Virus record (IMG/VR): IMGVR_UViG_3300024259_002152
Coordinates: 124,001 to 188,000 of that record
Length of the DNA: 64,000 bases
Direction: 5' to 3' (one strand)
Part shown: positions 27,474 to 63,901 of the stretch, in pieces
How the letters are laid out: each line of letters begins with the position of its first letter
Numbering within the stretch: position 1 is the stretch's first letter
Made by a program: the position numbers and the translations under genes
Notes under the pieces: generated by a model
What the model saw: only the letters and a program-made list of their open reading frames with translations
The model's database searches: none
Told to the model about the DNA's origin: nothing

Positions 27474-29423
27474 ATGTTTCATATCGTGCATCTCGTGGAT
27501 AATCTTGGCATTGGTGGCGCCCAATCTATGATGTTTGAATTGTATCAAGCCCTCGCGAATTATTATCCACAATATCCTCAAAGTATTTTTTATACGCAAA
27601 ATAATAGAACAGATGATAAATTCATATCTTCTTATGGGGTTCCTTGTAGATATGCTAAAAATAATGATTGGATATTAAAAAAGATCAATAAAAGAGGTAA
27701 TGTTGTTGTTATTTATCATAAATTAGCTAGTTCTCATTATAAGATATTAGATTTAATTAAAAGTAGAACAAGCGCTAAAGTCGTGGTTATTAATCATACT
27801 CTTTATAAATCATCTTCATGGGCAAGGGTTAAAAGTATTGATATTATGGTGGCAGTTAGTAATCATATGTTGCAGGCTATGCAGCATTGGTATCCTAAGC
27901 TTAATAAAGTATGTATTCATAATTCAGTAGGATCTTATAAATACGACGCTATAGCTCCTAGAAAAGCTAATAAAAAAGGTATTTTATTAACAGGTCGAGT
28001 AAATAGGATATGTCAGTGGAAGCATCCAACTGATTGGGCCAATTGGTGTAAAGATATTAAATTAGAAAAAGCAATGGTTCATGAATATATAGGAAATTCT
28101 GTTGGAAGAAGTAGAAATAATGTTAGAGGGCAAAAAAGCAAAGGAAGAAATGTAGTAAATATGATGGGGGGTATTAGTGATTTTACTACAAAAATTTCTA
28201 TTATGAAAGACTGGGATGTATTTCTATATGAAACAAATAAGGACGAAGGGATAAGTATGGCTATCTTAGAGTCTTTGGCATGTGGTGTTCCAGTTGTTTG
28301 TAGTGACCATTTTGGGAATAAAGAGATTATAGAAGATGGTGTGAATGGGTATGTTTTTAAAAACAGAAAACATGCTGCAAAGATTTTGAATCGTTTAGTG
28401 AAAAATCCAGAAGAATTAAGTAAACTTAAAACGACTACTAAGATTCATTTTAAGGAGAAGTTGGATTCTCAATATATGGCATGTAAATATATTAAAGTTA
28501 TGGAGGAGGTTATGGGAAATAACCCGGATAAGATAAAAGAACCAAAACAAAATGTAGAAATAATTGATAGATTTAAGGATGAAGCAAATTTAATTGAATC
28601 GGAGCCTTCTCGAAAAGAAGTTAGTGTAGAATTGGCAAAAATCCCGGAACCTAGTAGAAAATTTTCTATTTTAACATCTAGTTTTGATAAGGGAGAATTT
28701 TTATATGATTGGTCGAATTCTATTTTGGCCCAGAAATATAGACCATTAGAAGTAGTTTTTGCTAACGACTGTTCGACAGATAATACATTGGAGATGGTAG
28801 AGGGCTTTAAAAAACAATTTTTAGATAGTGGTATCGAATTTGTGCTAGTTAATAACGACAGTAGATTACATTGCGGTTCTTCATATAATGATTTGATCAA
28901 ATATGCCACAGGTTCTTATTTCGGAGTGCTAGATGCTGATGATATGTTGGTAGATGATTCAGTTGAATATGTGATGAAGAAATATGATGAATATAACAAT
29001 GTTACGTGGATATACACTCAATTTGATATTTGCGATATGAATATGAAATCTAGGAAAAGGGGATTTTGCTGTTGTCCTAAAAAAGGTGAAAGTTTATTAG
29101 ATTTGGGGAATAGAAGGGTTCACGGTTTTGGTCATTGGAGAACATTTTGTTATAGATTTCCAAGAATAAATAAAATATTTGGTAAAAAACTAAAATGTGG
29201 CGTGGATAAATTTATGGGATATAGACTAGAAGAGTTTGGTCAGGGGATGTTCGTTGATAGAGTGTGCTATAAATATAGACAACATCCTGTAGGTTCTCCT
29301 AAATCTGTTTCTTCAACAAAAGAGGCCATTAATGTGTGGGGAGATATCAAGAGAAAAGCAAGTTCTCGTAGGAAAAGATATAATTTAAAAACATCTCCAA
29401 TAATTAATTGTAAGAATATATAA
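27474..29423 (+). CDS. two-domain glycosyltransferase (GT4-like + GT2-like)
   Basis: N-terminal half has GGAQ and EGISMAILESLACG; C-terminal half has NDCSTD and LDADD. Confidence 0.85.
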   Translation: MFHIVHLVDNLGIGGAQSMMFELYQALANYYPQYPQSIFYTQNNRTDDKFISSYGVPCRYAKNNDWILKKINKRGNVVVIYHKLASSHYKILDLIKSRTSAKVVVINHTLYKSSSWARVKSIDIMVAVSNHMLQAMQHWYPKLNKVCIHNSVGSYKYDAIAPRKANKKGILLTGRVNRICQWKHPTDWANWCKDIKLEKAMVHEYIGNSVGRSRNNVRGQKSKGRNVVNMMGGISDFTTKISIMKDWDVFLYETNKDEGISMAILESLACGVPVVCSDHFGNKEIIEDGVNGYVFKNRKHAAKILNRLVKNPEELSKLKTTTKIHFKEKLDSQYMACKYIKVMEEVMGNNPDKIKEPKQNVEIIDRFKDEANLIESEPSRKEVSVELAKIPEPSRKFSILTSSFDKGEFLYDWSNSILAQKYRPLEVVFANDCSTDNTLEMVEGFKKQFLDSGIEFVLVNNDSRLHCGSSYNDLIKYATGSYFGVLDADDMLVDDSVEYVMKKYDEYNNVTWIYTQFDICDMNMKSRKRGFCCCPKKGESLLDLGNRRVHGFGHWRTFCYRFPRINKIFGKKLKCGVDKFMGYRLEEFGQGMFVDRVCYKYRQHPVGSPKSVSSTKEAINVWGDIKRKASSRRKRYNLKTSPIINCKNI

Positions 29424-29424
29424 T

Positions 29425-30186
29425 ATGAACGATAAATTTACTATTTTAACATCTTCATTTAATAAATATTCCTATCTTAAGGATTGGTCTAAATCTATCA
29501 TTGCCCAAAAGTATAGACCTTTAGAAGTTGTTATGGTGGATGATTGTTCTGATGATGGTACTAGAAAGCTGGTTAAAAGATTTAGAAAAAGATTTGCGGA
29601 GAATAATATATCTTTTAATTATATTAGAAATAAGAAAAGATTGCATTGTAGTAGTTCTTATAGGAGAGCAATAGAGAATGCTACAGGTGATTTTATGGGG
29701 GTATTAGATGCGGATGATATGCTATCAGATGATGCAGTAGAATACATAATGGGCAAATATAATCGGTATAAAGATATTGCGTGGATATATACCCAATTCT
29801 CTATTAATGATGTTAAAATGAATTATATTAAAGATGGTTTTTGTAGAATGCCTACACCGTGGGGTTCTATGTTGGATTCAGGAGAAAAAAGAAAACAGGT
29901 TTATTCTCATTGGAGAACATTCTCTAAACGTTGTACTGATTTGAGTAATTTATTGCCTGAAGGACTGAGGTGCGCAGTTGATAAGTATATGGGTTATAGG
30001 CTAGAGGAGTTAGGTAATGGGATGTTTATCAATAGGGTTTGTTATAAATATAGGCAAGGTGTTAACAGGGGGATAGTTGCTAAAGAAAGCACAAAAGATA
30101 CGTGGAAGAAGTTGGTTCGAGGGTTAGTAGAGAATAGAAAAAAGCATAATATAAAACCATATCCCATTATAGAAGGTGAAATATGA
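29425..30186 (+). CDS. GT2-family glycosyltransferase
   Basis: VDDCSDD and LDADD; paralog of the C-terminal domain of the upstream gene. Confidence 0.85.
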   Translation: MNDKFTILTSSFNKYSYLKDWSKSIIAQKYRPLEVVMVDDCSDDGTRKLVKRFRKRFAENNISFNYIRNKKRLHCSSSYRRAIENATGDFMGVLDADDMLSDDAVEYIMGKYNRYKDIAWIYTQFSINDVKMNYIKDGFCRMPTPWGSMLDSGEKRKQVYSHWRTFSKRCTDLSNLLPEGLRCAVDKYMGYRLEELGNGMFINRVCYKYRQGVNRGIVAKESTKDTWKKLVRGLVENRKKHNIKPYPIIEGEI

Positions 30187-30851
30187 TAGAAAGAACGAAG
30201 AAACAATGGCATCGTTATTTTATAGAAGAAATTTCTAACATAGTTTGTGAGCACGTGCATTTAGGTAATGATGTTTTTGTTGAATGCGGAGTTAAGCAGG
30301 GGTCTTCATCTGTAAGAATGGCCCAGAGATTGAATATTGATGGTTATTTGTTTGACACCTGGCATGGTTTTCCTGATTTTTCTGATTTTGATTTTAATTC
30401 TGAAATAGATAGGGGCAAAATGAAACGTAGAGTGGAGATGGCTAATGATACCTACGATGATTGTATTCGCAATTTAACTAAAAAAGGAGTTATAAAATTC
30501 TGCACTTTAGTTAGAGGAGACATTCTAAAAACTGTTCCAGAATTTATTAAAGATCTAAATGATTTTGATATAGCGATGATGCATATAGATACCGATTTGT
30601 ATATGCCAGCTAAAATTTCATTAGAACAATTTTGGCCATATGTAAAAGATTCTGGGGTTGTATTTTTTCATGATTATGGAGATAAAAAATGGAGAGGGAT
30701 TAAGAGGGTTGTCGATAAATTAGTTGATATAGATAATAATTTATATTTTTATCAGTTTGATGAAGGCAAATTATTTTCAGCATGCGTCGTAAAGATTAAA
30801 AACGAAGAAAGTTTGAATATTTTTAACAAAATAAAATGTTTGGATAATTAA
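30183..30851 (+). CDS. TylF/MycF-family O-methyltransferase
   Basis: VECGV, FDTWHGF, HIDTDLY and FHDY motifs. Confidence 0.85.
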   Translation: MIERTKKQWHRYFIEEISNIVCEHVHLGNDVFVECGVKQGSSSVRMAQRLNIDGYLFDTWHGFPDFSDFDFNSEIDRGKMKRRVEMANDTYDDCIRNLTKKGVIKFCTLVRGDILKTVPEFIKDLNDFDIAMMHIDTDLYMPAKISLEQFWPYVKDSGVVFFHDYGDKKWRGIKRVVDKLVDIDNNLYFYQFDEGKLFSACVVKIKNEESLNIFNKIKCLDN

Positions 30852-30858: not shown

Positions 30859-31803
30859 ATGAAACTTCTTATAGTAATGAAAAAATTCAGTGGCGGACCT
30901 AAGATATTTAGACAAAGATTGTCTGATGTTCTTGAAAAAGAATCTAAAGAAATGGGAATAGAAATAGTTCATGATCCCAAGGGTAAGTTTGATATAGAAT
31001 TGGCATTTGTAAGAAATTTAATGCAACATAGAAAACCTGTGATTTTAAGAGTGGATGGATGCTATATAGGAGGAGGGTATGAAGGTAAAAATCATCTTTA
31101 CAAAGAGGCCGCTAAAAATGCCAAATTTGTAATTTATCAGTCTGAGTTTTCCCGTAGAATGTGCGAAAGTATATGGCGTATTCAGAGGCCAAATACTATT
31201 ATTCATAATGGGATTAATTTTGACGAATTAAAGGGAATAGAAAAAGATTCATCTATTCCAGGGGGTTCTTTTGTTGCTTCTGCTATATGGAGAAAGAATA
31301 AGAGACCAGTTTCTATGATTCAGGGTTTTATAGATGCAGGCATAAAAAATAATTTCTATATTATTGGAGACACGTACGGCATTCCAGATAAGTATCTTAA
31401 TAGATTTAGAAAACATAAAAATATTCATTTTTTAGGTCCTTGTGATTTTAATAGGTCCATTTCTATTTTTAAAGCATGTGATTATCAATTACATCTTTCT
31501 CAAATAGAGTCTTGTCCGAATGCTGTTATTGAGGGATTGGCTTGTGGGCTTAAGATTTTATATAGCAATTTACAGGGAACAAAAGAAATTGTACCGTCTG
31601 AAGATGGGGTAATGATCAAAACTGATAAGTGGAAATTTCAACCAACAGGTCTTGGTCAGCATGATAGAATAACGTCTGGATTAGTAGCTGATGGCATACG
31701 TAGACTAATGGCGTTACGAAGCGAGAAGAAAACATATCGTCCAGAAATAGATATTCACAATGTTGCTAAACAATATATAAAGGTGATAAAAGAGCATGCC
31801 TAA
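30859..31803 (+). CDS. GT4-family glycosyltransferase
   Basis: IHNG and ESCPNAVIEGLACG motifs. Confidence 0.85.
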   Translation: MKLLIVMKKFSGGPKIFRQRLSDVLEKESKEMGIEIVHDPKGKFDIELAFVRNLMQHRKPVILRVDGCYIGGGYEGKNHLYKEAAKNAKFVIYQSEFSRRMCESIWRIQRPNTIIHNGINFDELKGIEKDSSIPGGSFVASAIWRKNKRPVSMIQGFIDAGIKNNFYIIGDTYGIPDKYLNRFRKHKNIHFLGPCDFNRSISIFKACDYQLHLSQIESCPNAVIEGLACGLKILYSNLQGTKEIVPSEDGVMIKTDKWKFQPTGLGQHDRITSGLVADGIRRLMALRSEKKTYRPEIDIHNVAKQYIKVIKEHA

Positions 31804-32527
31804 AGTATCGGTAATAACGACCTTATATAACTACAGGGATTATATCGTTGATTGTATCGAATCATTTTTGACTCAGGATTTTAAAGATTCTGAAATGATT
31901 ATAGTCGATGATAATTCTACTGATAAACCCTACCCCAGTATTAAAAAATATATATCTGATAGAGTTAAGTATATCAAATTAGATAAAAATAAAGGATATT
32001 CTCATGCTAAAAATGTGGGTATAAAAGCTGCTGATTCTGATGTTCTTGTGATGCTAGATGCTGACGATATGAATGTGAAAAATGGTATATCATTGAGATA
32101 CCAGAAGATACAGGAGGGTTTTGATTTCGTTCATGGTCCAGTTCTGGATTTTACTGTAAAAAGAGGGGAGACAAGGACAAAAGAATCAAGATTGTGGCCC
32201 AAATGGAAAAAGAGCAAACAGAATGCTTCTTGTTATAAATTGGTTCATGCTCAGAGCGCCATGCTAAGAAAAGATATCCATAAGAAGATAGGGTTATACG
32301 ATGAGTCTTTAAGAAGTAAAAGTGATAGAGAAATGTTCGCTAGAATATTTTTTCATAATTTTAAGACAACTTATGTGGAAGATTATGTTAGTTTGTATCG
32401 TAGGCACAATAGGCAAATGCATAGATCTCCAGAAAAGTTAAGAATAAATAATAAGTTACAGAAACACGTCTTAGCATTAATAGAGAAAAGAAAAACTAAT
32501 TTATCAGGCGTTGAGATGTTAAAATAG
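31796..32527 (+). CDS. GT2-family glycosyltransferase
   Basis: VSVITTLYN, VDDNSTD and LDADD motifs. Confidence 0.88.
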   Translation: MPKVSVITTLYNYRDYIVDCIESFLTQDFKDSEMIIVDDNSTDKPYPSIKKYISDRVKYIKLDKNKGYSHAKNVGIKAADSDVLVMLDADDMNVKNGISLRYQKIQEGFDFVHGPVLDFTVKRGETRTKESRLWPKWKKSKQNASCYKLVHAQSAMLRKDIHKKIGLYDESLRSKSDREMFARIFFHNFKTTYVEDYVSLYRRHNRQMHRSPEKLRINNKLQKHVLALIEKRKTNLSGVEMLK

Positions 32528-32534: not shown

Positions 32535-32888
32535 ATGGATAAGCAGGGAAAAATATGGGGTTTTACTTCTGAGATATTTGGTAAGAATAACGTAGAAGTT
32601 TATAGGATAGTTGGGAACTCTAATTGTTATTGTTCTAAACATAAGCACAACCACAAATATAATATGTTTTTTATTGAGAGTGGGAAAATAAAAGTTGAAA
32701 GATGGAAAAACGATTATGATCTTATAGATGAGACGATTTTGCAAGAAGGTCAAACATGTGTGGTTCCTCCTGGAGAATATCATAGATTTTCTATTATTGA
32801 CAGTTGCGTGGTTTATGAATTTTATTGGGTGGAAATAGATTCTAAAGATATTGTTAGGGAAAATGTTGGAGGAATAGAAAGTGAATAA
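32535..32888 (+). CDS. cupin-domain protein (sugar isomerase-like)
   Basis: GKIWG, HKHNHK and VPPGEYHRF motifs. Confidence 0.75.
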
Positions 32889-33876
32889 AAAAGCATTTAT
32901 TACTGGTATTACTGGACAGGACGGTTCTTATTTGGCGGAGTTGTTATTAAATAAGGGGTATACGGTTTATGGTATTATTCGCCCTAGTTCTACTTTTAGT
33001 ACAGGGCGTATTGATCATATTGTAGGAAATGATAATTTAAGTTTGATATATGGAGATTTGACAGATGATGGAAAGTTATTTTCCATTTTAAGTGACATTA
33101 AACCAGATGAAGTTTATAACTTGGGTGCTCAAAGTCATGTCAGAGTTAGTTTTGATATGCCTGTGTATACTGTTGATACTGATGCCCTTGGAACATTGAG
33201 AGTCCTTGAAGCTGTGAGGTTAATGGACAATAAACCTAAGTTTTATCAGGCGTCTAGTAGCGAGATGTATGGCAACATAGTAGAAACTCCTCAAAATGAA
33301 AAAACTCCATTTTATCCAAGAAGTCCATATGGTTGTGCAAAAGTATATAGTTTTTGGCAAACAATTAATTATCGAGAAGCTTATTATATTTTTGCTTGTA
33401 ATGGTATATTATTTAATCATGAATCACCAAGAAGGGGGGAAACATTTGTTACTCGTAAAATAACCAGGGCAGCTACGAGAATAAAGTTAGGGTTGCAAAA
33501 AGATCTTTACCTGGGCAATCTTGACGCCAAACGCGACTGGGGTTTTGCAGGTGATTATGTTGAAGCAATGTGGCTGATGCTGCAGCAGGATGAGTCGGAT
33601 GACTATGTTGTAGCAACAGGAGAGACTCATTCTGTAAGGGAATTTTTGGACGAGGTGTTTGAATATCTTGATTTGGATTGGCAAGAATATGTAAAGATAG
33701 ATGAAAGATTTTATAGGCCTACAGAAGTCGATATATTATTGGGGGATCCTTCCAAAGCGAAAGATGTTTTAAAATGGGAACCCAAAGTTTCATTTAAGGA
33801 ATTGTCTAAAATGATGATAAATAGTGATATGAAATTAGCCAAAGAAGAAAAGTTATATAAGGATAATATCGCATAA
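32881..33876 (+). CDS. gmd: GDP-mannose 4,6-dehydratase
   Basis: [22 protein letters not shown] and [15 protein letters not shown] motifs. Confidence 0.97.
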
Positions 33877-55802: not shown

Positions 55803-55803
55803 A

Positions 55804-56715: not shown

Positions 56716-56718
56716 ATT

Positions 56719-57354
56719 TTGAAAGATCGTCATGTTATTATTATTGGAGCAGGACACACTATAAAACAATATAAAAATCAGATTTTAAAATACATTGAAA
56801 AGAATAGTGCTTTAACAATTGGTATTAATATGATGACATCTTTATGTGTACCTAATTATCATTTGTGGACTAATAAACAAAGATACAAGACACAATATCA
56901 TTGCATAGATAAGAAATCAAAGTTATTGTTTGGAAATAGTTTATCAGATAAACTTGTAAGAAAATACTGGGAAGGCGATTTTGAAAGAATTAATCATATT
57001 AATGATAAATCTGCTGCTATTTCATATAATAAAGGTGTTATACGCGGAAATTTTAGAACGGCTGGAATTTTAGCTATTATGATTGCCCATGTGAGAGGGG
57101 CCAATAAAATTGATGTTGTAGGAATGGATGGATTTACTTTGTATAATAAAAAGGACGTCATCAAAAAGAGAGCCAATCAACATTGTTACGGGAAGGGGCA
57201 TACTGATGATGCTAGTTGGGAAGAGTGTTTGGAAAAGGATAGGTTAGTTGATGATGGTTTACATGCTCTAAAAGATTACGGAGTTGAATTCGAGATTATT
57301 ACTCCAACCAAATTTAAAGATTTTTGTAATCTCTCTGTTTTGGATAACGTATGA
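56719..57354 (+). CDS. DUF115/Maf/MptE-like protein
   Basis: IIGAG, IGIN and TAGILAI...VVGMDG motifs. Confidence 0.6.
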   Translation: MKDRHVIIIGAGHTIKQYKNQILKYIEKNSALTIGINMMTSLCVPNYHLWTNKQRYKTQYHCIDKKSKLLFGNSLSDKLVRKYWEGDFERINHINDKSAAISYNKGVIRGNFRTAGILAIMIAHVRGANKIDVVGMDGFTLYNKKDVIKKRANQHCYGKGHTDDASWEECLEKDRLVDDGLHALKDYGVEFEIITPTKFKDFCNLSVLDNV

Positions 57355-57992
57355 ATATAAAAGAGATTAGAGAAGGCGTTAAAAATAAGCATTGGTATTA
57401 TTATTATAATTTCGATGGAGTGGAAGTTAATAAGAAGAAACAAAAAGATAAAACTCTTGGCTTTTATAACTGGTGTAAAATTAAACCAATTATGGGTGGT
57501 TTATTTAGCCACGTTGATAACCCAAGTATTCTAGATATAGGTTGTAATATGGGTTTATACGATCACGAAATGACCAAGATGGGAGCAAGTGTGGTTGGAG
57601 TGGATTCTAATATAGAAAATATCGAATTCTATAAAAGATATGTTGTAGAGAATAAAAAGGAAGATTGGAAAGTTGTTATTAAAAATGTTGATATCTGCAA
57701 AGAGATAATTATTAATGATAATATTAATATAATTACAATGTTTTGCGTTTTATATCATTTGAGGCCTCATCAAGATAGAGTAATGAAGAATATTATTAAA
57801 GGCGCTCCTAACCATAGATTTATAGTTTTGCAAGGTAATTTACCAAGAGTGAAAAAGAAGAATCAATTTGAAGCAGGTATAGATGGTATGACAAATTTTT
57901 TACAGCATTACTCTTATTCTATTTTTAAAATATATGAATGGGATGGATATCCAAAACCGATAGTGATCGGAGAAAGATGTGTTGGTAATTAA
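57351..57992 (+). CDS. class I SAM methyltransferase
   Basis: ILDIGCNMG, GVD and VLYHL motifs. Confidence 0.82.
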   Translation: MNIKEIREGVKNKHWYYYYNFDGVEVNKKKQKDKTLGFYNWCKIKPIMGGLFSHVDNPSILDIGCNMGLYDHEMTKMGASVVGVDSNIENIEFYKRYVVENKKEDWKVVIKNVDICKEIIINDNINIITMFCVLYHLRPHQDRVMKNIIKGAPNHRFIVLQGNLPRVKKKNQFEAGIDGMTNFLQHYSYSIFKIYEWDGYPKPIVIGERCVGN

Positions 57993-58001
57993 TTTAATAT
58001 T

Positions 58002-58592
58002 ATGTCAAAAAACAGTTTAATAAAATATATTAGAAAATATGATCTAGAATTATTGATGTTGAAAAATGTTAAATTGGAAGAAACTTGTATGCAATATAGA
58101 CCAGAATCTTTATTCTATGACCTAATGAGAGATAAAAATGGAATAATTGATTTAACTATGAAAAATTCACCCCATCGCGAATTTGCATTTTTATACTATA
58201 GAAAAGGGTTGAAATGGCTCACGAAAAATTTTAAAAATACAAAGTACTGTCAATTTAAAAGTAAAATATTAAATAGAGATATTAATGTTCCTATGAGAAA
58301 AATTAGGTTATTTGATTCTTTAAAAAAAGGATATCTCTCGAAAGGATTTGAAAAAGATTACATCGTCTTATTAGAAAGACCTTTAGTAGAAACTAGATAT
58401 GGAGTTAAATGTAGTGAGTATTCATGTCCAGAAGTTTTTATGGGCCATCATAGAATCGGAGCTTTATTGAGTTGCGGAGTTAAGAAGGCGGACGTTATTA
58501 TAGCTAGAGATATTGCTTCCGATAGTAGGCAATGTTTTGGAAAAATACATAATATTTATAAATTATTGAGTAATAATGAATCAGTTAATTAA
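58002..58592 (+). CDS. ParB/Srx-like domain protein
   Basis: DSLKKGY...EVFMGHHRIGAL. Confidence 0.5.
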   Translation: MSKNSLIKYIRKYDLELLMLKNVKLEETCMQYRPESLFYDLMRDKNGIIDLTMKNSPHREFAFLYYRKGLKWLTKNFKNTKYCQFKSKILNRDINVPMRKIRLFDSLKKGYLSKGFEKDYIVLLERPLVETRYGVKCSEYSCPEVFMGHHRIGALLSCGVKKADVIIARDIASDSRQCFGKIHNIYKLLSNNESVN

Positions 58593-60144
58593 AAAATATC
58601 ATATCAAAAATGATGAATTATCTAAAAATGTTGTTATAATATGTTGCCCATGGTTGTTTCAAAATCAGGTAGAATTTAAGTCTCAGAATTTGGGTCTTGC
58701 TTATGTCGGTAATTTTATAAAAGAATGTGGACATAATATTCTCAAATATATAGATCCGATGATGTTTGGTGGAGAAGATGTTAAACAGAAGATAGAATGT
58801 AACAATTATAATATATATAGATTTGGTCATGGCGATGAATGGATTATCGATAAAATTCCAGATAATGTTGATTATATTTTTATTAATGCTCCATTTACAG
58901 ATTCTCGTTTAGCTTTATATCCTCTATGTAATAAAATTAAAAAAGTTATGCCTCATATCAGAATAGTAATAGGTGGCATATTGGCAACTTCATCTCCTCT
59001 AGAAGTTATAAGGAATTGTGGCATTGATATTGTCGTCAAAGGGGAGGGAGAAATAGCTTCTGCCAGGATATTAAGAGAAGATAATTTATCAGAAATACCA
59101 GGTATAGCATATAAGATAGGAATAGACGTAGTTGAAAATGACGGGCTGGCAGAAAAAGTTTATGATATAAATTGTCTTCCTGGTTTATCTGATGTATCGT
59201 TTATCCCTATAGGGGAATATATTAAATGGTCTCCCAGGGGCAACAGGGCGGATATTACATTGTCCTATATTACTTCTAGAGGGTGTCCTTTTAGTTGTAA
59301 TTTTTGTTCTGTTCCGACAAATAAGCAAGCGTTAAGAGAGCTTGATACCGATAGGGTTATTCATGAAATAGATTTTTTTATTGATGAATATAAAATAAAT
59401 CATTTGGAAATAGAGGATGATAATTTTACATTTAATCATGATCATTCTCGTCCTATTGTAAACCATATAGCCGAATTAAGAGAAAATGGTGTTGATATAT
59501 CTTTATCATTTCCTAATGGGGTCATGATTTATTCTTTGGATAAAGATGATATATTGGGGTTTAAGAAAGCTGGGGTTGAAATTGTTTATTTGCCAGTTGA
59601 ATCTGGTGATATTAAAAATTTGATACTCATGAATAAACCTTATGCTTTTGAGCATCTGGATAAATCGTTAGAAGTGGCTAGATGGTGTAAGGAAGTGGGC
59701 ATAGAATCAGGGGCATTTTTTATTATAGGTTATCCAGGTGGAAGAGTTAAGAGTTTTAAATATAGGGATTTTATTTTAAGTCACTATAAAAATGACATAA
59801 TTGATTATAATGATGATTCTTTATTGGTTATGGGGGAGGATCAAAAATCGTTTGAAAAAACTTTTCAATTTATGAAAAAGATAAAGGCTCAGGGAGTTTC
59901 ATTTATAACTCCTTTAATTGCAACTCCCTATCCTTCCACGAATTTGTATAATGTATGTAGTGAAAATTCTTGGTTTAGACATGAGGATGATATAAATCGT
60001 ATAGTAACTATTTCTTATCAAGATTTAAAAGAAGAATTCATTAATATCTCAACCCCATGGTGCTCAAATTCCGATATATATGATAGATGGCAGATGGTTA
60101 GAGATAATTTTGATATTAAAAACAATGTCATAAAAGAAAAATAA
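58576..60144 (+). CDS. cobalamin-binding radical SAM enzyme
   Basis: LGLAY, GG, GEGE, TSRGCPFSCNFC and EDDNF motifs. Confidence 0.9.
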   Translation: MNQLIKKYHIKNDELSKNVVIICCPWLFQNQVEFKSQNLGLAYVGNFIKECGHNILKYIDPMMFGGEDVKQKIECNNYNIYRFGHGDEWIIDKIPDNVDYIFINAPFTDSRLALYPLCNKIKKVMPHIRIVIGGILATSSPLEVIRNCGIDIVVKGEGEIASARILREDNLSEIPGIAYKIGIDVVENDGLAEKVYDINCLPGLSDVSFIPIGEYIKWSPRGNRADITLSYITSRGCPFSCNFCSVPTNKQALRELDTDRVIHEIDFFIDEYKINHLEIEDDNFTFNHDHSRPIVNHIAELRENGVDISLSFPNGVMIYSLDKDDILGFKKAGVEIVYLPVESGDIKNLILMNKPYAFEHLDKSLEVARWCKEVGIESGAFFIIGYPGGRVKSFKYRDFILSHYKNDIIDYNDDSLLVMGEDQKSFEKTFQFMKKIKAQGVSFITPLIATPYPSTNLYNVCSENSWFRHEDDINRIVTISYQDLKEEFINISTPWCSNSDIYDRWQMVRDNFDIKNNVIKEK

Positions 60145-60172
60145 ATTAACATATTTTGTGAAGGTCATGAAC

Positions 60173-61159
60173 ATGAATACAAAAGTTATTGCTGAGATCG
60201 GTGTTAATCATAATGGAGATTATGAGTTATCTAGAAAAATGCTTAAATCAGCCAGTGAGAGCGGTGCTAATATCGTTAAATTTCAAACCCACATAGCAGA
60301 TAAAGAAATGATAGGTGATATAGGAAAATATGCCACTATATTTCCTACCATTTACGATCATATAGATAATTTGAGTTTATCTTTTGATGAAATGAAAAAT
60401 CTCAAAACTTACTCGGATGAATTAGGAGTAGAATTTTTATCAACTCCGTTTAGCGTAGAGGCTGTAGATTGGTTAGAGGATATAGGGGTTAATGCTTATA
60501 AGATAGGATCTGGAGAAACTGATGATTTTCTTTTATTAGAAAGAATATGTAGAACTGGTAAACTTATTCTTATATCTACAGGTATGAGTTCTATGGAAGA
60601 AGTAAATAAAATGGTACATTTTTTAAATAGTATGAATGCTAATTTTATTTTAATGCAATGTACTTCTCATTATCCTGCTTCTTATGATGTTATTAATTTG
60701 AAGGTTCTTGATGTGTATAGAAAAGAATTTAATTGTAATGTAGGGTTGTCTGATCATAGTCCTAGTATTTATACCTCATTAGCTGCTGTTGCTATGGGCG
60801 CAATCGTTGTGGAAAAACACTTTACCATAGATAAAAGTTTACCTGGCACAGATCAAGAAGGATCTATTTTACCAAACGAATTAAAAGAGATGGTGAAAGC
60901 CATAAAAATAGTAGAAGAATGTATGGGCGATGGAAATAAAAATTCCGTTATTATTGATGAAAATGTTATGAAATTATTTAAACATGGAATAGTCGCTAAA
61001 AAGGATTTGGCTAAAGGGGATGTGATAGGAGTAGAGGATATAGCAAGTAAAAGGCCTTTAGTTGGAATTCCTTCATGTGAATATCAGAATGTGATAGGAA
61101 AGAGTATTAAAAATAGTATTCTAAGAGATAGTCCAATTTTATTCGAAGATATATCATAG
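60173..61159 (+). CDS. NeuB family synthase #3 with SAF domain
   Basis: IAEIGVNHNG, STPF, KIGSGE, SDHS, EKHFT and C-terminal KRP motifs; start could instead be 60158 or 60167. Confidence 0.92.
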   Translation: MNTKVIAEIGVNHNGDYELSRKMLKSASESGANIVKFQTHIADKEMIGDIGKYATIFPTIYDHIDNLSLSFDEMKNLKTYSDELGVEFLSTPFSVEAVDWLEDIGVNAYKIGSGETDDFLLLERICRTGKLILISTGMSSMEEVNKMVHFLNSMNANFILMQCTSHYPASYDVINLKVLDVYRKEFNCNVGLSDHSPSIYTSLAAVAMGAIVVEKHFTIDKSLPGTDQEGSILPNELKEMVKAIKIVEECMGDGNKNSVIIDENVMKLFKHGIVAKKDLAKGDVIGVEDIASKRPLVGIPSCEYQNVIGKSIKNSILRDSPILFEDIS

Positions 61160-61170
61160 GAAGGTTTGGA

Positions 61171-62115
61171 ATGGATGATTATTATTCTACATTTGATGAT
61201 AAAAGAATAACTCATATCATTGATATGATTAGAAAGATCCAGAAAATTGACACGGTAAATTTCACTGAATTAGATTTAACGAAATACAAAAAAGACATAT
61301 CGTATTTATATCCTATACATAATTTTTACAGGTTTATATACCCCATACTTCTAAGAAATAAAATGGAAGATATTGGCATAGGTGATAAAATAAAAGATCC
61401 AGTTGAGAAAATTTATGGTGAGGGGCGAGAATTTAGTATTTTTGAGTCTCATCATATAAATTTAGATACGGGTTTCTTTATTAATCAATTTATTAAGGAT
61501 AATAATGTTAAAACTATTTTAAACTGCGGCACGGGTTCGGGATCTAGCGTAGCGTATGCTCAGATGGGATTGAAAGATGTTCATGTTACAACGATTGATC
61601 ATATGCAAGAATTTTCTAGGATATCTAAATTTATAATAGATATTTTAAGAGATATTGGATTTCCTTTGGGCGATGATATTAATTATATAGATGTTGATTT
61701 ATGTGAGTTAAAAGATACAGATTGTCAACATGGGTATGAATCTTTTTTATTCACAAATAGATTTAGAAAAGTTTATAAAAAACATCATTCCCTTATATCT
61801 TATGATATAAATTTTGAAAATAAATTCGATATGATAATACTTGACGGTCCGTCGTTTTTTAGATTTCCTACTTTATTGAAAGCTGTTAATTTTTTGAATA
61901 ACGATGGTTATATTCTATTTGAATATTGCAGACAAGAAATAAGAATAATAAAAAAACTTAAGATAAATATATTGGAAGAAAAAGGGAGAAGTATGGATAA
62001 ATCAATAAAGATTAGGTCGAAGGGTGACGAGTTGGTTAGAGCTTTTACTGTTATCAGGGGAGAAGATTTTAAAAAGGTTATAGAACCATTCATAAAGGTG
62101 CGAAATGATATTTAA
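61171..62115 (+). CDS. putative class I SAM methyltransferase
   Basis: ILNCGTGSGS and IILDGP motifs. Confidence 0.65.
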   Translation: MDDYYSTFDDKRITHIIDMIRKIQKIDTVNFTELDLTKYKKDISYLYPIHNFYRFIYPILLRNKMEDIGIGDKIKDPVEKIYGEGREFSIFESHHINLDTGFFINQFIKDNNVKTILNCGTGSGSSVAYAQMGLKDVHVTTIDHMQEFSRISKFIIDILRDIGFPLGDDINYIDVDLCELKDTDCQHGYESFLFTNRFRKVYKKHHSLISYDINFENKFDMIILDGPSFFRFPTLLKAVNFLNNDGYILFEYCRQEIRIIKKLKINILEEKGRSMDKSIKIRSKGDELVRAFTVIRGEDFKKVIEPFIKVRNDI

Positions 62116-63238
62116 AAAAATATGTTATATTACTTCCAGCCGTTCTGATTATGCTAAAGTAAAAAATCTTCTAAAACAAATAAACGAGGACGATGAGTTT
62201 GAGCTGTACATAATAGCCACTAGCGCTCAAATTAAACAAAGATTTGGAGATGGTGTTCAAGAATTAATTGATGATGGTTTAACAATACATAAAAGAGTTG
62301 ATTGTATGGTTGAGGGAGACAATAGGCTTGCAATGTTAAAATCATCAGCCATGGAAATATATGAATTAACGAATATTATAGATGAATTAAAACCTGATCT
62401 TGGCCTAGTAGTTGGAGATCGTTTTGATATGTTGACTTCTGTATATGTTCTTTCTATGATGAATATACCAATTGCCCATATACAGGGGGGAGAAAAAACA
62501 GGAACGATAGATGATGTTATAAGGGATGTTATGACCAAATTTGCTCATATCCATTTTGTTTCAAATGAAGATGCTAGGCAAAGAGTTGAGTCTTTATCGG
62601 AAGATAGACAATACATTTATAATGTCGGTTGTCCTAGCTTTGATTATATAAAAAGTTTAGATATACCTGACGATATTGATTATAATATTTTATTGCCTTT
62701 TTGTAAAGACGATATTGATATTAGTAAAAAAGATGATTATTTTATTGTAATCGTACACCCAAACGTGGCGATAGAAGAAGATATAGATATGAAAATAATC
62801 TTAGATGCATTAGATAATTTTGAGAATAAAAAAGCTATTTTTTATCCAAATACAGATCCATTTCATCAAAAGATTATTAATGCTATTAATAGAAAACACG
62901 ATTATATGAAATTTAAACATATCTCTATGGAATGTTTTATGATGTTACTTAAACATTGCAAATGTATGATTGGTAATTCAAGTAGTGGTATCCGAGAAAC
63001 GTGTTTTTTTGGTGTTCCAACAGTTAATATAGGTAGAAGGCAAGAAGGTAGACTGAGTGGAAAGAATGTAGTTAATGTTAAATGCTCTGAGGACGACATC
63101 GTTAGTGGAATAAAATCAGTTTATAATAAAACTTTTGAGCCAGAATATCTTTATGGTAATGGGGCTTCAAGTGATAAGATTGTGGATATTTTGAAATCTT
63201 ATGATAATTTTGAATATAAAAATATATGTATTAAATAA
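62105..63238 (+). CDS. neuC: hydrolysing UDP-GlcNAc 2-epimerase
   Basis: SRSDY, GDRFD, HIQGGE, GNSSSG and RQEGR motifs. Confidence 0.9.
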   Translation: MIFKKICYITSSRSDYAKVKNLLKQINEDDEFELYIIATSAQIKQRFGDGVQELIDDGLTIHKRVDCMVEGDNRLAMLKSSAMEIYELTNIIDELKPDLGLVVGDRFDMLTSVYVLSMMNIPIAHIQGGEKTGTIDDVIRDVMTKFAHIHFVSNEDARQRVESLSEDRQYIYNVGCPSFDYIKSLDIPDDIDYNILLPFCKDDIDISKKDDYFIVIVHPNVAIEEDIDMKIILDALDNFENKKAIFYPNTDPFHQKIINAINRKHDYMKFKHISMECFMMLLKHCKCMIGNSSSGIRETCFFGVPTVNIGRRQEGRLSGKNVVNVKCSEDDIVSGIKSVYNKTFEPEYLYGNGASSDKIVDILKSYDNFEYKNICIK

Positions 63239-63901
63239 ATGAAAACACTGGCAATATATTTAAATGTTAGAAAAAATAGTTCTAGATGCAAAAATAAACT
63301 TCTTAAATTTTTTGCAGGAACATGTTTGTTCGATATCGCCTTAAAGAAGCTAGAACAAGTGAGGTCGGATGAAAAATTTGTTTGTGCTTATGATAGAGAG
63401 TTTTTTGAATATCAACATAATTCTTCTATTAAACATTATGTTAGAAGTAAAGAATCTGTATCTATTGATGGGCCATTAACAAAAGTATTTGAATGTTATA
63501 ATTCTTTTCAGTCTGACTATGTTATGTTTCTCAATCCTTCTCATGCCCATTTAAGAGTAGATACGATACAATCTGCTGTAGATTTTTTTAAAGCATCTAA
63601 TTATGAGTCCATGACATCTGTAGAAAAGATTAATGACTGGATATTTGATAATGATGGGAAGTTATTATATCCTTCTGATTTGGCCCATGGAGATACTAAA
63701 AGAACAGATCCTTCATATAGGGCTGCACATGCTTTTCATATATATAGTAGAAAAAGATTTATAGATAATAATGGATTGATATGGCCATGGCTGAAAAATG
63801 ATCCTCATTTATTTGAAATATCAAAGATAGAATCTTTGGATGTTGATGATGAGGTTGATTTTAAAATTAGTGAGTCTGTATACCTAGCGCATCTCGATTA
63901 A
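63239..63901 (+). CDS. cytidylyltransferase (NeuA-like) #3, divergent
   Basis: RKNSSRCKNK, NPS and SLDVDD motifs. Confidence 0.75.
   Translation: MKTLAIYLNVRKNSSRCKNKLLKFFAGTCLFDIALKKLEQVRSDEKFVCAYDREFFEYQHNSSIKHYVRSKESVSIDGPLTKVFECYNSFQSDYVMFLNPSHAHLRVDTIQSAVDFFKASNYESMTSVEKINDWIFDNDGKLLYPSDLAHGDTKRTDPSYRAAHAFHIYSRKRFIDNNGLIWPWLKNDPHLFEISKIESLDVDDEVDFKISESVYLAHLD

What the first reader, a model, noticed from the sequence alone, without database searches (positions are those of the whole stretch)
27474..63901. 36-kb, about 45-gene glycan-synthesis island with no export or polymerisation machinery
Seen: co-oriented, tightly coupled genes including about 23 glycosyltransferase-like proteins, 8 SAM methyltransferases, a B12 radical SAM enzyme and nucleotide-sugar enzymes. 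No multi-pass hydrophobic protein (Wzx, Wzy, ABC transporter, initiating phosphoglycosyltransferase) is visible. Established: cellular O-antigen and capsule loci normally include these. Inference: in a phage-like genome this is a cytoplasmic pathway that glycosylates virion proteins (a glycan shield, as on giant-virus fibrils), DNA, or host surface precursors. The scale is unusually large for a phage.
Basis: partly seen in the sequence, partly recalled or inferred. Interest (0 to 1): 0.8.

Follow-up and report, generated by a model that had tools for sequence, protein, structure and literature searches.

The report
Huge phage's 60-kb glycan factory
An uncultured 351-kb marine phage spends about a sixth of its genome on a membrane-free sugar-building pathway. 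Elsewhere it encodes poly-serine proteins next to a mucin-type initiating enzyme, so it probably makes its own heavily glycosylated, mucin-like protein, perhaps a coat for the virus particle.

Summary
Window 27474-63901 carries 45 same-strand genes with no gap above 13 nt. They include 17 supported glycosyltransferases (up to 23), 6-8 methyltransferases, a B12 radical-SAM enzyme, GDP-fucose-type genes, a NeuC/NeuB set and cytidylyltransferases. No gene encodes a real membrane protein.

The island is larger than reported. It continues outside the window to about 60 kb and 72 genes, 17% of a 351-kb contig listed in IMG/VR. That contig also carries phage-type genes: Apyc1, endonuclease VII, homing endonuclease, intein, split PolIII alpha, and clamp and SSB PHROGs. 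No Wzx, Wzy, ABC exporter or priming transferase appears in the 145 kb inspected.

About 25 kb past the island lie two paralogous proteins with 104-130-residue poly-Ser tracts. They flank a glycosyltransferase whose only solved relatives are polypeptide GalNAc-transferases, with the DxH, WGxENxE and HxFR motifs kept. Island and Ser-rich module co-occur in all four related huge phages found (219-548 kb).

Best reading (0.5): a phage-run, cytoplasmic, mucin-type protein O-glycosylation system, probably decorating the particle. Main rival (0.25): remodelling of host surface glycans through host export machinery. Capsid and terminase genes were not reached, and no chemistry is shown.

The parts
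27474..29423 (+). Two-domain glycosyltransferase: GT4 (GT-B) N-half, GT2 (GT-A) C-half. First gene of the island.
   Evidence: Pfam Glycos_transf_1 5e-18 and Glycos_transf_2 4e-19. Orthologues at 70% and 53% identity in 298-kb and 548-kb phages.
29425..30186 (+). GT2 glycosyltransferase, paralogue of the C-half of the first gene
   Evidence: Pfam 85 bits. 50% identity to 27474 residues 396-644.
30183..30851 (+). TylF/Methyltransf_24-type sugar O-methyltransferase
   Evidence: Pfam 9e-12 and 3e-6
30859..32527 (+). GT4 (30859-31803) and GT2 (31796-32527) glycosyltransferases
   Evidence: Pfam. Conserved in both relatives.
32535..34832 (+). Cupin (32535), GDP-mannose 4,6-dehydratase (32881) and SDR epimerase/reductase (33876): a GDP-6-deoxyhexose (fucose-type) cassette
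   Evidence: Pfam GDP_Man_Dehyd 465.7 bits, Epimerase 185 bits. The dehydratase and SDR are absent at this place in the two relatives. The dehydratase's nearest cellular relatives are Planctomycetota at 74-77%.
34829..35584 (+). GT-A-fold protein, probable glycosyltransferase with no Pfam family
   Evidence: AF2 pLDDT 92.8. Foldseek hits KfiA, B4GALNT1 and mimivirus R699 at 1e-7, but also UDP-glucose pyrophosphorylases. 42 homologues, all unnamed.
35568..36569 (+). Divergent GT4-like GT-B glycosyltransferase
   Evidence: ESM Atlas feature hits 0.97-0.99 to GT1/GT4 clusters. Recruited by the iterated GT4 profile of 39235.
36581..39232 (+). Four conserved proteins of unknown function: 36581 (faint methyltransferase hint), 37075 (possibly TPR-like helical), 37878 and 38558 (48% identical paralogues, faint GT-A hint)
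   Evidence: No Pfam hits. Atlas lead only at 0.94. hhalign 20% and 9%. Partly conserved in relatives.
39235..40149 (+). GT4-like glycosyltransferase
   Evidence: Weak Pfam hit, 20.9 bits. Paralogue of 30859, E 3e-21.
40137..40616 (+). Conserved protein of unknown function
   Evidence: No family hit. 67% orthologue in the 548-kb phage.
40618..41742 (+). GT-B-fold transferase of the CDP-glycerol/Kdo/polysialyl-transferase kind
   Evidence: Atlas structure TM 0.75-0.78 to Glyphos_transf and Epimerase_2-like clusters. Feature hits to Capsule_synth, A-2_8-polyST and DUF6716.
41739..42275 (+). SAM methyltransferase
   Evidence: Pfam Methyltransf_11, 31 bits
42272..43261 (+). Possible GT2 glycosyltransferase
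   Evidence: Pfam 19.7 bits, below the 23.3 cut-off
43261..45566 (+). D-2-hydroxyacid dehydrogenase (43261), FkbM methyltransferase (44223), CMP-ulosonic-acid cytidylyltransferase (44877)
   Evidence: Pfam 155, 62 and 84 bits. PseF/KdsB-like, below equivalog cut-offs.
45576..47318 (+). Two paralogues (43% identical) with weak NodZ-like (fucosyltransferase) similarity
   Evidence: Pfam 22.3 and 15.4 bits, below cut-off. Paralogy E 2e-85.
47311..48000 (+). Unknown protein. The TM helix of ORF 47227-48000 is an artefact of ORF extension.
   Evidence: ATG 47311 overlaps the stop of the previous gene. The hydrophobic stretch lies inside that overlap.
48006..49444 (+). NeuB-family ulosonic-acid synthase without SAF domain (48006) and GT2 (48788)
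   Evidence: Pfam NeuB 173 bits, GT2 43 bits
49432..50190 (+). GT42/DUF115-like (sialyltransferase/Maf superfamily) transferase
   Evidence: Pfam MptE-like 2e-5. The profile of this protein with its paralogues hits C. jejuni Cst-II and Cst-I, E 4e-5.
50177..51570 (+). SAM methyltransferase (50177) and GT4 (50701)
   Evidence: Pfam 59 and 71 bits
51567..52962 (+). Two unknown proteins. 51567 has a faint DUF115-like signal.
   Evidence: Pfam E 0.16. hhalign 28%. Not found by the 4-sequence DUF115 profile. Orthologues in three relatives.
52962..53612 (+). FkbM methyltransferase
   Evidence: Pfam 60.6 bits
53605..54498 (+). Divergent GT2 glycosyltransferase
   Evidence: About half of 81 homologues carry PF00535. 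Several sit on contigs of 186-548 kb.
54500..55306 (+). GT8-like retaining glycosyltransferase with DxD motif
   Evidence: AF2 pLDDT 96.1. Foldseek hits glycogenin, LgtC, XXYLT1 and LARGE1, about 2e-6. Invariant F-D-G-D. Orthologues in all four IMG/VR genomes.
55308..57354 (+). Unknown (55308), GT4 (55804), unknown with faint DUF115-like signal (56719)
   Evidence: Pfam 78.7 bits for 55804. E 0.046 for 56719.
57351..58592 (+). SAM methyltransferase (57351) and unknown protein (58002)
   Evidence: Pfam 31.6 bits. No hit for 58002.
58576..60144 (+). B12-binding radical SAM enzyme (class B, probable C-methylase)
   Evidence: Pfam Radical_SAM 60 bits and B12-binding 44 bits. Absent from this place in the relatives.
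60158..63901 (+). Sialic-acid-type cassette: NeuB+SAF (60158), unknown (61171), hydrolysing UDP-GlcNAc 2-epimerase NeuC (62105), cytidylyltransferase-like (63239)
   Evidence: NeuC_NnaA 352 bits, above the 236 cut-off. NeuB_NnaB 329 bits, below the 400 cut-off. CTP_transf_3 23.9 bits.
7449..7703 (+). Acyl-carrier-protein-like gene upstream of the island (possible acyl decoration of sugars)
   Evidence: PF00550 PP-binding in the precomputed list
9364..10077 (+). GT42/DUF115-like transferase outside the island
   Evidence: PF01973. Member of the profile that hits Cst-II.
16130..18737 (+). GT42/DUF115-like (16130), two unknown proteins, and a cytidylyltransferase (18006)
22501..24595 (+). Third NeuB-like synthase (22501), endonuclease VII (23399) and HAD phosphatase (24011)
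   Evidence: Pfam NeuB 198.6 bits. Precomputed PF02945 and PF08282.

Best explanation
The island is the elaboration part of a phage-encoded, wholly cytoplasmic protein O-glycosylation system of the mucin type.

Shown:
- The phage makes its own activated sugars: a GDP-6-deoxyhexose, a sialic-acid-type sugar through NeuC/NeuB, CMP-Kdo through KdsB, and at least two further CMP-ulosonic acids.
- It carries about 20 soluble glycosyltransferases, four to seven sialyltransferase-like (GT42/DUF115) enzymes, and many O- and C-methylases.
- It carries no lipid-carrier priming enzyme, flippase, polymerase or exporter.
- Elsewhere in the same genome, two proteins with poly-Ser tracts of over 100 residues and no signal peptide flank a polypeptide-GalNAc-transferase-like enzyme.

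Inferred:
- That enzyme puts the first sugar on the serine tracts.
- The island's transferases extend, cap (with ulosonic acids) and methylate the chains.
- The finished glycoprotein leaves the cell as part of the virion, as surface fibrils or a glycan shield, because a cytoplasmic protein has no other route out before lysis.
- Cassettes present in one phage but not its relatives (GDP-fucose-type genes, NeuBCA plus the B12 enzyme) diversify the glycan between lineages.
For: 1. Pathway content and the lack of any membrane step: enzymes; no TM proteins in 94.7 kb; no Wzx, Wzy, ABC or PGT Pfam family in about 145 kb.

2. Initiator. L111:2733-4415 hits only polypeptide GalNAc-transferases in the PDB, 15 chains from E 1.5e-9 to 0.03. 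The DAH, WGWENVE and HLFR motifs are kept in the 56%-identical orthologue of the 298-kb phage.

3. Acceptors. Two paralogues (66% identical N-domains, 29 Cys each) carry Ser runs of 104 and 130 residues and have no signal peptide or TM segment. The family has 61 clusters. Most full-length members carry S/T tracts of 42-97 residues after the N-domain.

4. Conservation. The module 'C39-like peptidase, then Cys-rich/Ser-rich protein(s)' occurs in all four IMG/VR relatives. GT-A genes are adjacent in three of the four, and they belong to different families: GT27-like twice, and Glyco_tranf_2_4 plus Nucleotid_trans once. This argues for a functional link rather than inherited gene order.

5. The island itself is conserved, with gene-level gains and losses, in the same four genomes.

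6. Precedents. Giant-virus fibril glycosylation by viral clusters (PMC9614988, PMC10117803). Glycans on mycobacteriophage capsid and tail-tube subunits, as cited in PMC12619734.
Against: - No capsid, portal, tail or terminase gene was seen in the 145 kb inspected. Virion location is therefore pure inference.
- The Ser-rich genes lie among replication and nucleotide-metabolism genes, not in a recognisable structural module.
- Island and Ser-rich module are 25-40 kb apart. Their co-occurrence in four genomes of one lineage may reflect shared ancestry only.
- Solved GT42 enzymes act on lipo-oligosaccharide, and Kdo is typical of LPS and capsules. The same enzymes would therefore fit a lipid-linked glycan.
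- In the 548-kb relative no GT is adjacent to the Ser-rich protein.
- No RNA run was listed for the island. No glycan chemistry exists.
Confidence: 0.5

Rival explanations
1. The island remodels a host cell-surface glycan (LPS O-antigen or core, capsule, S-layer or flagellin glycan). The phage supplies sugars and peripheral transferases that act on host lipid-linked intermediates, and the host's own priming enzyme, flippase and ligase do the membrane steps. The effect would be to block superinfection or to stop progeny from sticking to debris.
For: This is the published reading of the largest phage sugar clusters known so far, such as the 15-gene cluster of cyanophage P-SSM2 (PMC7824862). Cellular O-antigen transferases are also soluble or peripheral, so the lack of TM segments does not exclude it. 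KdsB/CMP-Kdo and Cst-II-like enzymes are typical of LPS/LOS. Cassette-level variation between relatives resembles O-antigen loci.
Against: Among about 72 island genes and 145 kb inspected there is not one membrane step. A backbone of about 20 transferases conserved at 50-80% identity across phages of 219-548 kb argues for one phage-specific product rather than adaptation to varying host serotypes. This reading does not explain the conserved poly-Ser proteins with adjacent polypeptide-type transferases.
Confidence: 0.25
2. The island makes a soluble glycoside, a free oligosaccharide or a glycolipid (a secondary-metabolite-like product) that acts inside the infected cell or is released at lysis.
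For: The content has a natural-product flavour: B12 and other radical SAM enzymes, TylF- and FkbM-type methyltransferases, two thiamine-enzyme pairs, an aldo-keto reductase and a nearby ACP. Iyer et al. proposed such a product for a second cyanophage cluster (PMC7824862).
Against: There is no aglycone-forming machinery (PKS, NRPS, terpene synthase) in the lists. About 20 transferases is far beyond known glycoside pathways. Multiple CMP-ulosonic-acid branches point to a surface-type glycan.
Confidence: 0.08
3. The transferases hypermodify the phage DNA with glycans to evade restriction.
For: Phages do glycosylate hydroxymethyl-pyrimidines, sometimes with several sugars (bioRxiv 10.1101/2023.12.21.572611, listed). 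The genome has a divergent thymidylate-synthase-family gene, DNA methyltransferases and a MazZ-like gene.
Against: The thymidylate-synthase-like gene sits where a relative has ThyX, so plain dTMP synthesis is the simpler reading. No T4-type DNA glucosyltransferase family was hit. Ulosonic acids, methylated deoxyhexoses and about 20 transferases are out of scale for base modification.
Confidence: 0.03
4. The contig is not a phage but a cellular or plasmid-like replicon (for example a reduced symbiont or a mis-assembly), so the island is an ordinary cellular glycan locus.
For: No capsid or terminase gene was reached. The genome carries bacterial-type PolIII alpha, RecA, topoisomerase I, a histidine kinase and response regulators.
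Against: - The identical sequence and three relatives are IMG/VR viral contigs.
- Phage-type genes are present: Apyc1 anti-defence, endonuclease VII, LAGLIDADG endonuclease, an intein, and phage-family clamp, SSB and CCA-adding enzyme PHROGs.
- There is no tRNA in 64 kb. Nearly all genes lie on one strand over more than 115 kb, and most are small ORFans.
- Independent assemblies from several samples bridge both island borders.
Confidence: 0.03

Closest known systems
Mimivirus/Megavirinae fibril glycosylation clusters (APMV 9-12 genes) and the CroV 38-kb, 34-ORF carbohydrate cluster (PMC9614988, PMC10117803)
   Same: A virus encodes its own nucleotide-sugar pathways (including Kdo in CroV), glycosyltransferases and methyltransferases. 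It works in the cytoplasm without ER/Golgi or bacterial export machinery. In mimiviruses the product decorates a protein carrier on the particle. GT8-like and GT-A models of this island match giant-virus proteins.
   Different: The host here is a prokaryote and the virus is phage-like, with PolIII alpha, RecA and overlapping co-oriented genes. The island is larger (about 60 kb, 72 genes, 17% of the genome). It has several CMP-ulosonic-acid branches and GT42-like enzymes. The candidate carrier is a poly-Ser protein, not a GMC oxidoreductase.
Cyanophage P-SSM2-type 'LPS' gene clusters (15 genes; PMC7824862)
   Same: A large phage genome carries epimerases/dehydratases, cupin isomerases, nucleotidyltransferases and several paralogous glycosyltransferases without exporters. 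Content varies between related phages.
   Different: This island is about five times larger and has sialic-acid-type and Kdo branches and radical SAM enzymes. It sits in a PolIII-alpha lineage with no close GenBank relative. It is accompanied by poly-Ser proteins and a polypeptide-type transferase, which points to protein rather than LPS.
Eukaryotic mucin-type O-glycosylation started by polypeptide GalNAc-transferases (GT27)
   Same: The catalytic domain matches only GT27 structures, with the DxH, WGxENxE and HxFR motifs. Ser-rich tandem tracts serve as presumed acceptors. Extension would be by many transferases, with sialic-acid-type caps.
   Different: There is no type II membrane anchor and no ricin-type lectin domain. 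The N-terminal 320 residues are unrelated and Cys-rich. The setting is cytoplasmic, and the donor sugar is unknown.
Campylobacter jejuni flagellin O-glycosylation locus and Cst-II/Maf-type enzymes (own knowledge for the locus; PDB matches for Cst-II)
   Same: A roughly 50-gene cytoplasmic protein-glycosylation island with several NeuB paralogues, cytidylyltransferases, DUF115 (Maf) paralogues, methyltransferases and an ACP, and no flippase or polymerase.
   Different: That locus adds single modified nonulosonic acids to flagellin and has few classical GT2/GT4 enzymes. Here about 17 classical transferases imply long or branched chains. No aminotransferase of the Pse/Leg routes was seen.
Mycobacteriophage virion glycosylation (Freeman et al. 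2023, as cited in PMC12619734)
   Same: Phage-encoded transferases glycosylate the phage's own structural proteins in the cytoplasm.
   Different: As far as I recall, those phages carry only a few transferase genes and use host sugar nucleotides (own knowledge; the paper could not be opened). Here there is a complete supply chain of about 72 genes.

Membership tests
Wzx/Wzy- or ABC-dependent O-antigen/capsule locus | Initiating phosphoglycosyltransferase (WbaP/WecA type) | tested here: not met
   No PF02397 or PF00953 in my Pfam scans or in the precomputed lists for about 145 kb. The remaining 206 kb were not seen.
Wzx/Wzy- or ABC-dependent O-antigen/capsule locus | Flippase with polymerase, or ABC exporter (multi-pass membrane proteins) | tested here: not met
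   The hydropathy scan of 125 ORFs over 94.7 kb finds no protein with two or more hydrophobic segments. No such Pfam family appears in the lists.
Wzx/Wzy- or ABC-dependent O-antigen/capsule locus | Clustered glycosyltransferases and nucleotide-sugar genes | tested here: met
GT27 polypeptide GalNAc-transferase (protein L111:2733-4415, outside the window) | GT-A catalytic domain with DxH, the Gal/GalNAc-T motif WGGENxE, and the downstream His | tested here: met
   phmmer hits only GT27 chains, E down to 1.5e-9. DAH 403, WGWENVE 500 and HLFR 528 are also present in the orthologue.
GT27 polypeptide GalNAc-transferase (protein L111:2733-4415, outside the window) | Type II membrane anchor and C-terminal ricin-type lectin domain | tested here: not met
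   Maximum 19-residue hydropathy is 1.19. The protein ends with the catalytic domain, and Pfam finds only Glycos_transf_2.
GT27 polypeptide GalNAc-transferase (protein L111:2733-4415, outside the window) | Transfers GalNAc from UDP-GalNAc to Ser/Thr of a polypeptide | not testable with these tools
   Needs an enzyme assay with the neighbouring poly-Ser proteins.
GT42/DUF115 sialyltransferase-Maf superfamily (9364, 16130, 49432, and one gene outside the window) | Sequence-profile match to solved members; Gly-rich GxGPS motif and GxD motif | tested here: met
   The profile hits Cst-II, Cst-I and an LOS sialyltransferase, E 4e-5 to 5e-4. Motifs are visible in alignment A1. 51567 and 56719 are not recovered by the 4-sequence profile, so their membership is inconclusive.
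GT42/DUF115 sialyltransferase-Maf superfamily (9364, 16130, 49432, and one gene outside the window) | Uses a CMP-nonulosonic acid donor; acceptor is a glycan (Cst) or a protein (Maf) | not testable with these tools
   The context (3-4 NeuB-like genes, 5 cytidylyltransferases) fits the donor. The acceptor is unknown.
Sialic acid (NeuC-NeuB-NeuA) pathway | Hydrolysing UDP-GlcNAc 2-epimerase | tested here: met
   62105: TIGR03568, 352 bits, above the 236 cut-off
Sialic acid (NeuC-NeuB-NeuA) pathway | N-acetylneuraminate synthase and CMP-sialate synthetase at equivalog level | tested here: inconclusive
   60158: 329 bits, below the 400 cut-off. 63239: only CTP_transf_3 at 23.9 bits. The exact nonulosonic acid is undetermined.
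Tailed huge phage (Caudoviricetes) | Terminase large subunit, portal, HK97-fold capsid protein | not tested
   Not met in contig region 108-253 kb.
Tailed huge phage (Caudoviricetes) | Catalogued as viral; phage-family replication and anti-defence genes | tested here: met
   IMG/VR contigs. Apyc1, endonuclease VII and LAGLIDADG endonuclease. PHROG clamp, SSB and CCA-adding enzyme. The PolIII alpha trait of marine jumbo group PGC_A (PMC9123017).
Virus-autonomous virion glycosylation (mimivirus type) | Virus-encoded sugar activation and transferases | tested here: met
Virus-autonomous virion glycosylation (mimivirus type) | Glycan attached to a protein of the particle | not testable with these tools
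   Candidate carriers were found. Their presence in particles is unknown.

The most novel reading that the evidence does not exclude
A lineage of uncultured huge marine phages (219-548 kb) builds a true viral mucin. Poly-Ser proteins are O-glycosylated in the bacterial cytoplasm by a polypeptide-GalNAc-transferase-like initiator. They are then elaborated by a roughly 60-kb, 72-gene phage pathway into long, methylated chains capped with sialic-acid-type or Kdo sugars, which coat the particle. This would be the largest virus-encoded glycosylation system known, and a prokaryotic-virus counterpart of both mimivirus fibrils and animal mucins.
Probability: 0.35. Interest if true: 0.9.

Novelty: new variant of a known kind. 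Interest (0 to 1): 0.78.

Why it matters
Virus-encoded glycosylation is established for giant viruses of eukaryotes. In phages it is known only at small scale. A 2026 review still lists polysaccharide biosynthesis as an accessory trait of giant eukaryotic viruses and not of jumbo phages (PMC13359090).

Here a phage lineage commits about 17% of its genome to glycan synthesis, and the core of the pathway is conserved across genomes of 219-548 kb. That offers a concrete reason for genome gigantism in the poorly understood PolIII-alpha group of marine jumbo phages (PMC9123017).

The work also yields testable substrate-enzyme pairs: the poly-Ser proteins with the GT27-like enzyme. It provides a stock of soluble, membrane-independent glycosyltransferases, sialyltransferase-like enzymes and sugar C- and O-methylases of possible use in glyco-engineering.

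If the product coats the particle, it bears on phage stability, adsorption, grazing and sinking in the ocean.

Tried and rejected
- Megablast of 42 kb of the window, and tblastn of RecA, ORF 35568, the GT27-like domain and the Cys-rich N-domain against 50,697 GenBank phage records. No match, except RecA at 34% identity or less. There is no cultured relative to lean on.
- Relaxed Pfam (E up to 5) on 17 unassigned ORFs. Only noise or faint hints.
- Pairwise hhalign of shallow orthologue alignments against in-island GT, methyltransferase and Maf families. Too insensitive, best 28%. The first attempt timed out.
- PDB profile searches with alignments of 34829 and 54500. Nothing or spurious thrombin hits. 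AF2 plus Foldseek was needed.
- Walking about 45 kb downstream and 16 kb upstream to reach capsid or terminase genes. Only replication, nucleotide-metabolism, signalling and the Ser-rich module were found. PHROGs gave no structural hit on 18 large unknown proteins.
- RNA runs. None was listed.
- Promoter and terminator scan at the left border. Not above shuffled expectation.
- TM helix in ORF 47227-48000. Rejected as a start-codon artefact.
- 51567 and 56719 as DUF115 members. Not supported by the independent 4-sequence profile.
- Moraphages (PMC12619734). Considered as the lineage and rejected, because they use family B polymerase and reach only 307 kb.

Full report
**1. What the window is**

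All 91 ORFs of 100 aa or more that look like genes lie on the + strand. GC content is about 31% and GC skew is +0.22 to +0.40 throughout. The window holds no tRNA.

The identical sequence is part of several assemblies:
- JGI contig Ga0233437_1000033 of 350,866 bp, which is also IMGVR_UViG_3300024259_002152. Window position 27474 corresponds to contig position 151,474.
- A 326,829-bp contig of another JGI sample.
- Shorter Logan and ENA contigs from seawater metagenomes.

No GenBank phage is similar at the DNA level, and RecA is at most 34% identical.

The gene content around the island is phage-like:
- An intein-bearing UvrD helicase, Dam methylase, a LAGLIDADG endonuclease, the anti-Pycsar nuclease Apyc1, endonuclease VII and peptide deformylase.
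- A split PolIII alpha, RecA and a Toprim primase upstream.
- Topoisomerase I, a MazZ-like gene, a clamp loader, and a clamp, an SSB and a CCA-adding enzyme that match PHROG families.

PolIII alpha is the trait that marks the 'largely uncharacterized' marine jumbo-phage cluster PGC_A (PMC9123017). Capsid and terminase genes were not met in the 145 kb I could read. This is the main gap in the argument.

**2. The observation**

Window 27474-63901 holds exactly 45 genes. 26 of the 44 junctions overlap or abut, and the largest gap is 13 nt.

*Glycosyltransferases.* Pfam supports 11 proteins (12 domains). Six more were recovered by other means:
- 35568 is GT4-like.
- 40618 has a GT-B fold of the CDP-glycerol/Kdo/polysialyl-transferase kind.
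- 53605 is a GT2, because its homologues carry PF00535.
- 34829 has a GT-A fold.
- 54500 is GT8-like with an invariant DxD.
- 49432 is sialyltransferase-like.

That gives 17 supported transferases. Six further ORFs have only faint hints.

*Other enzymes.* Six methyltransferases are clear and two are faint. The B12 radical SAM enzyme, GDP-mannose dehydratase, an SDR, NeuC (which passes its NCBIfam cut-off), two NeuB-like synthases and two cytidylyltransferases are confirmed.

*Membrane proteins.* A Kyte-Doolittle scan finds no multi-pass protein. The single apparent signal anchor (ORF 47227) lies in a stretch that overlaps the preceding gene. The likely start at 47311 removes it.

**3. True extent**

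The island does not stop at 63901. Precomputed Pfam lists and fetched DNA show about 27 further genes up to contig position about 211,360:
- A reverse-strand DUF115-like ORF and KdsB (which passes its cut-off).
- Methyltransferases and a small HIGH-type cytidylyltransferase.
- A second 2-hydroxyacid dehydrogenase and four SDRs.
- Two thiamine-enzyme pairs and an aldo-keto reductase.
- A 442-aa radical SAM enzyme, an RmlC-like isomerase and a second B12 radical SAM enzyme.
- Two truncated UDP-glucose/GDP-mannose dehydrogenase genes and another DUF115-like gene.

The total is about 60 kb and about 72 genes, or 17% of the contig. Upstream of 27474 there are scattered further glycan genes: an ACP, two DUF115-like genes, a cytidylyltransferase, a third NeuB-like gene and a HAD phosphatase.

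None of the lists for contig region 108-253 kb contains a priming phosphoglycosyltransferase, Wzx, Wzy, an O-antigen ligase or an ABC exporter. A hydropathy scan of 125 ORFs over 94.7 kb finds no membrane protein.

**4. Sialyltransferase-like enzymes**

A profile of the PF01973-like proteins hits the Campylobacter sialyltransferases Cst-II and Cst-I and an LOS sialyltransferase in the PDB (E 4e-5). Four members are firm and up to three more are uncertain.

Three or four NeuB-like synthases and five cytidylyltransferases accompany them. This implies several CMP-activated ulosonic acids and matching transferases. Solved members of this fold act on glycans, and Maf-type members are thought to act on flagellin. 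The fold therefore does not fix the acceptor.

**5. A candidate acceptor and initiator**

I scanned the fetched flanks for Ser/Thr-rich proteins. About 25 kb beyond the island this found two paralogues of 524 and 599 aa. The second is 609 aa in another assembly.

Their architecture:
- N-domains of about 350 aa that are 66% identical, each protein carrying 29 Cys overall.
- Then 104 or 130 nearly uninterrupted serines, encoded by mixed Ser codons.
- Then a short C-domain.
- No signal peptide and no TM segment.

Between them lies a 560-aa protein. The only solved relatives of its C-terminal domain are polypeptide GalNAc-transferases (15 GT27 chains, E 1.5e-9 to 0.03). It carries the DxH, WGxENxE and HxFR motifs, which are conserved in its orthologue.

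The N-domain family is small: 61 clusters among 1.84 billion representatives. Most full-length members carry S/T tracts of 42-97 residues at the same position.

The module 'C39-like peptidase, then Cys-rich/Ser-rich protein(s)' is present in all four related IMG/VR genomes of 351, 298, 548 and 219 kb. GT-A genes are adjacent in three of them, and they are not orthologous:
- GT27-like in the 351-kb and 298-kb genomes.
- Glyco_tranf_2_4 (38.8 bits) plus Nucleotid_trans (22.3 bits) in the 219-kb genome.

Repeated recruitment of different transferases next to a Ser-rich protein is what one expects of an acceptor. Neither the GT27-like domain nor the N-domain occurs in GenBank phages.

**6. Conservation of the island**

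All four genomes carry the island. Left, middle and right parts are syntenic at 45-83% protein identity, with duplications, losses and swaps.

The GDP-fucose-type pair (32881-34832) and the block holding the B12 enzyme, NeuB, an unknown gene, NeuC and the NeuA-like gene (58576-63901) are absent at these positions in the relatives compared. Homologues of three island proteins sit on many other long marine contigs of 186-548 kb.

The picture is a conserved backbone with lineage-specific sugar cassettes.

**7. Mechanism**

*Shown:* a complete, soluble supply-and-transfer pathway; the absence of membrane steps in what was read; and a conserved poly-Ser protein module with polypeptide-type transferases.

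*Inferred:* the GT27-like enzyme primes the serine tracts. The island's enzymes extend, cap and methylate the chains. The product is exported as part of the particle.

I put this at 0.5. The host-surface reading, as proposed for cyanophage clusters (PMC7824862), stays at 0.25. The reasons are that peripheral transferases could feed host lipid-linked pathways, and that Kdo and Cst-type enzymes are LPS-like. A soluble glycoside product (0.08), DNA hypermodification (0.03) and a cellular origin (0.03) are minor. The thymidylate-synthase-like gene occupies the slot that holds ThyX in a relative, which argues against a hydroxymethylase role.

**8. Comparison and novelty**

The nearest analogues are the following:
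- Mimivirus fibril clusters of 9-12 genes, and the 38-kb, 34-ORF cluster of CroV (PMC9614988).
- The 15-gene cyanophage clusters (PMC7824862).
- Mycobacteriophage virion glycosylation, as cited in PMC12619734.
- The C. jejuni flagellin glycosylation locus (own knowledge).

Virus-run glycosylation is therefore a known kind. Four things are new here: the scale, the host domain, the multiple ulosonic-acid branches, and the mucin-type pairing of poly-Ser proteins with a GT27-like enzyme. A 2026 review does not list polysaccharide synthesis among jumbo-phage traits.

Verdict: new variant of a known kind, interest 0.78.

**9. Limits**

- Only 145 of 351 kb were read.
- Transmembrane prediction was a simple hydropathy scan.
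- Exporter absence rests on Pfam hits.
- Co-occurrence in four genomes of one lineage is not independent evidence.
- There are no expression or chemical data.

Noticed in passing
window 3991-6972: UvrD-type helicase of 993 aa interrupted by an intein (Intein_splicing/Hint between residues about 251 and 601).
   Followed up: no
window 12685-13800: Protein made of eight DUF4116 repeats (171 bits). Its function is unknown.
   Followed up: no
window 18802-20498 and 23399-23932: LAGLIDADG homing endonuclease, an Apyc1-type anti-Pycsar nuclease and an endonuclease VII gene. These are phage hallmarks interleaved with glycan genes.
   Followed up: partly
window 24877-27388: Two DUF1257 paralogues (40% identical), a peptide deformylase and a small radical SAM/Fer4_12 enzyme sit directly before the island. 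The 548-kb relative has two copies of the radical SAM gene.
   Followed up: no
whole window: Very strong and uniform GC skew (+0.22 to +0.40) on the coding strand, with essentially all genes co-oriented for more than 115 kb.
   Followed up: no
window 32881-33876: The nearest cellular relatives of the GDP-mannose dehydratase are Planctomycetota (74-77%), then other PVC-group bacteria. This is a weak, single-gene hint at the host. The gene is absent at this place in the two relatives compared.
   Followed up: partly
window 63867-64000 (continues to about 64511 outside the window), minus strand: The only reverse-strand gene inside the island (214 aa). It has a weak DUF115/MptE-like hit (E 7e-4).
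   Followed up: partly
L111:398-1114 and orthologues (L113, L114, L116, L117): A C39-like cysteine peptidase always sits just upstream of the Cys-rich/Ser-rich proteins. These proteins share a near-invariant N-terminus, G-F-(D/E)-x-C-x-P-P-x-C. This may indicate processing or attachment of the glycoprotein.
   Followed up: partly
L111:4415-6214 versus L112:11683-13512: The poly-Ser tract of paralogue B differs by 10 residues between two assemblies (599 versus 609 aa). This is either repeat-length polymorphism or assembly slippage.
   Followed up: no
L111:7750-9834, 12909-13773 (and L114): The phage carries a PAS histidine kinase and two response-regulator genes (on the reverse strand) plus a VWA protein. 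These are conserved in the 219-kb relative.
   Followed up: no
L025:371-2016: Two adjacent genes (264 and 282 aa) each hold only the N-terminal and central domains of UDP-glucose/GDP-mannose dehydrogenase. They may be truncated paralogues or a split enzyme.
   Followed up: no
gene list (upstream of window) and L025:13561-13977: PolIII alpha is split into two genes (471 and 657 aa) separated by eight small ORFs. A MazZ-like (d)GTP diphosphohydrolase N-domain gene lies downstream and hints at non-canonical nucleotide metabolism.
   Followed up: no
contig level: The same genome was assembled as 350,866 bp and as 326,829 bp in two samples. The 24-kb difference might be a terminal repeat or assembly wrap-around.
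   Followed up: no
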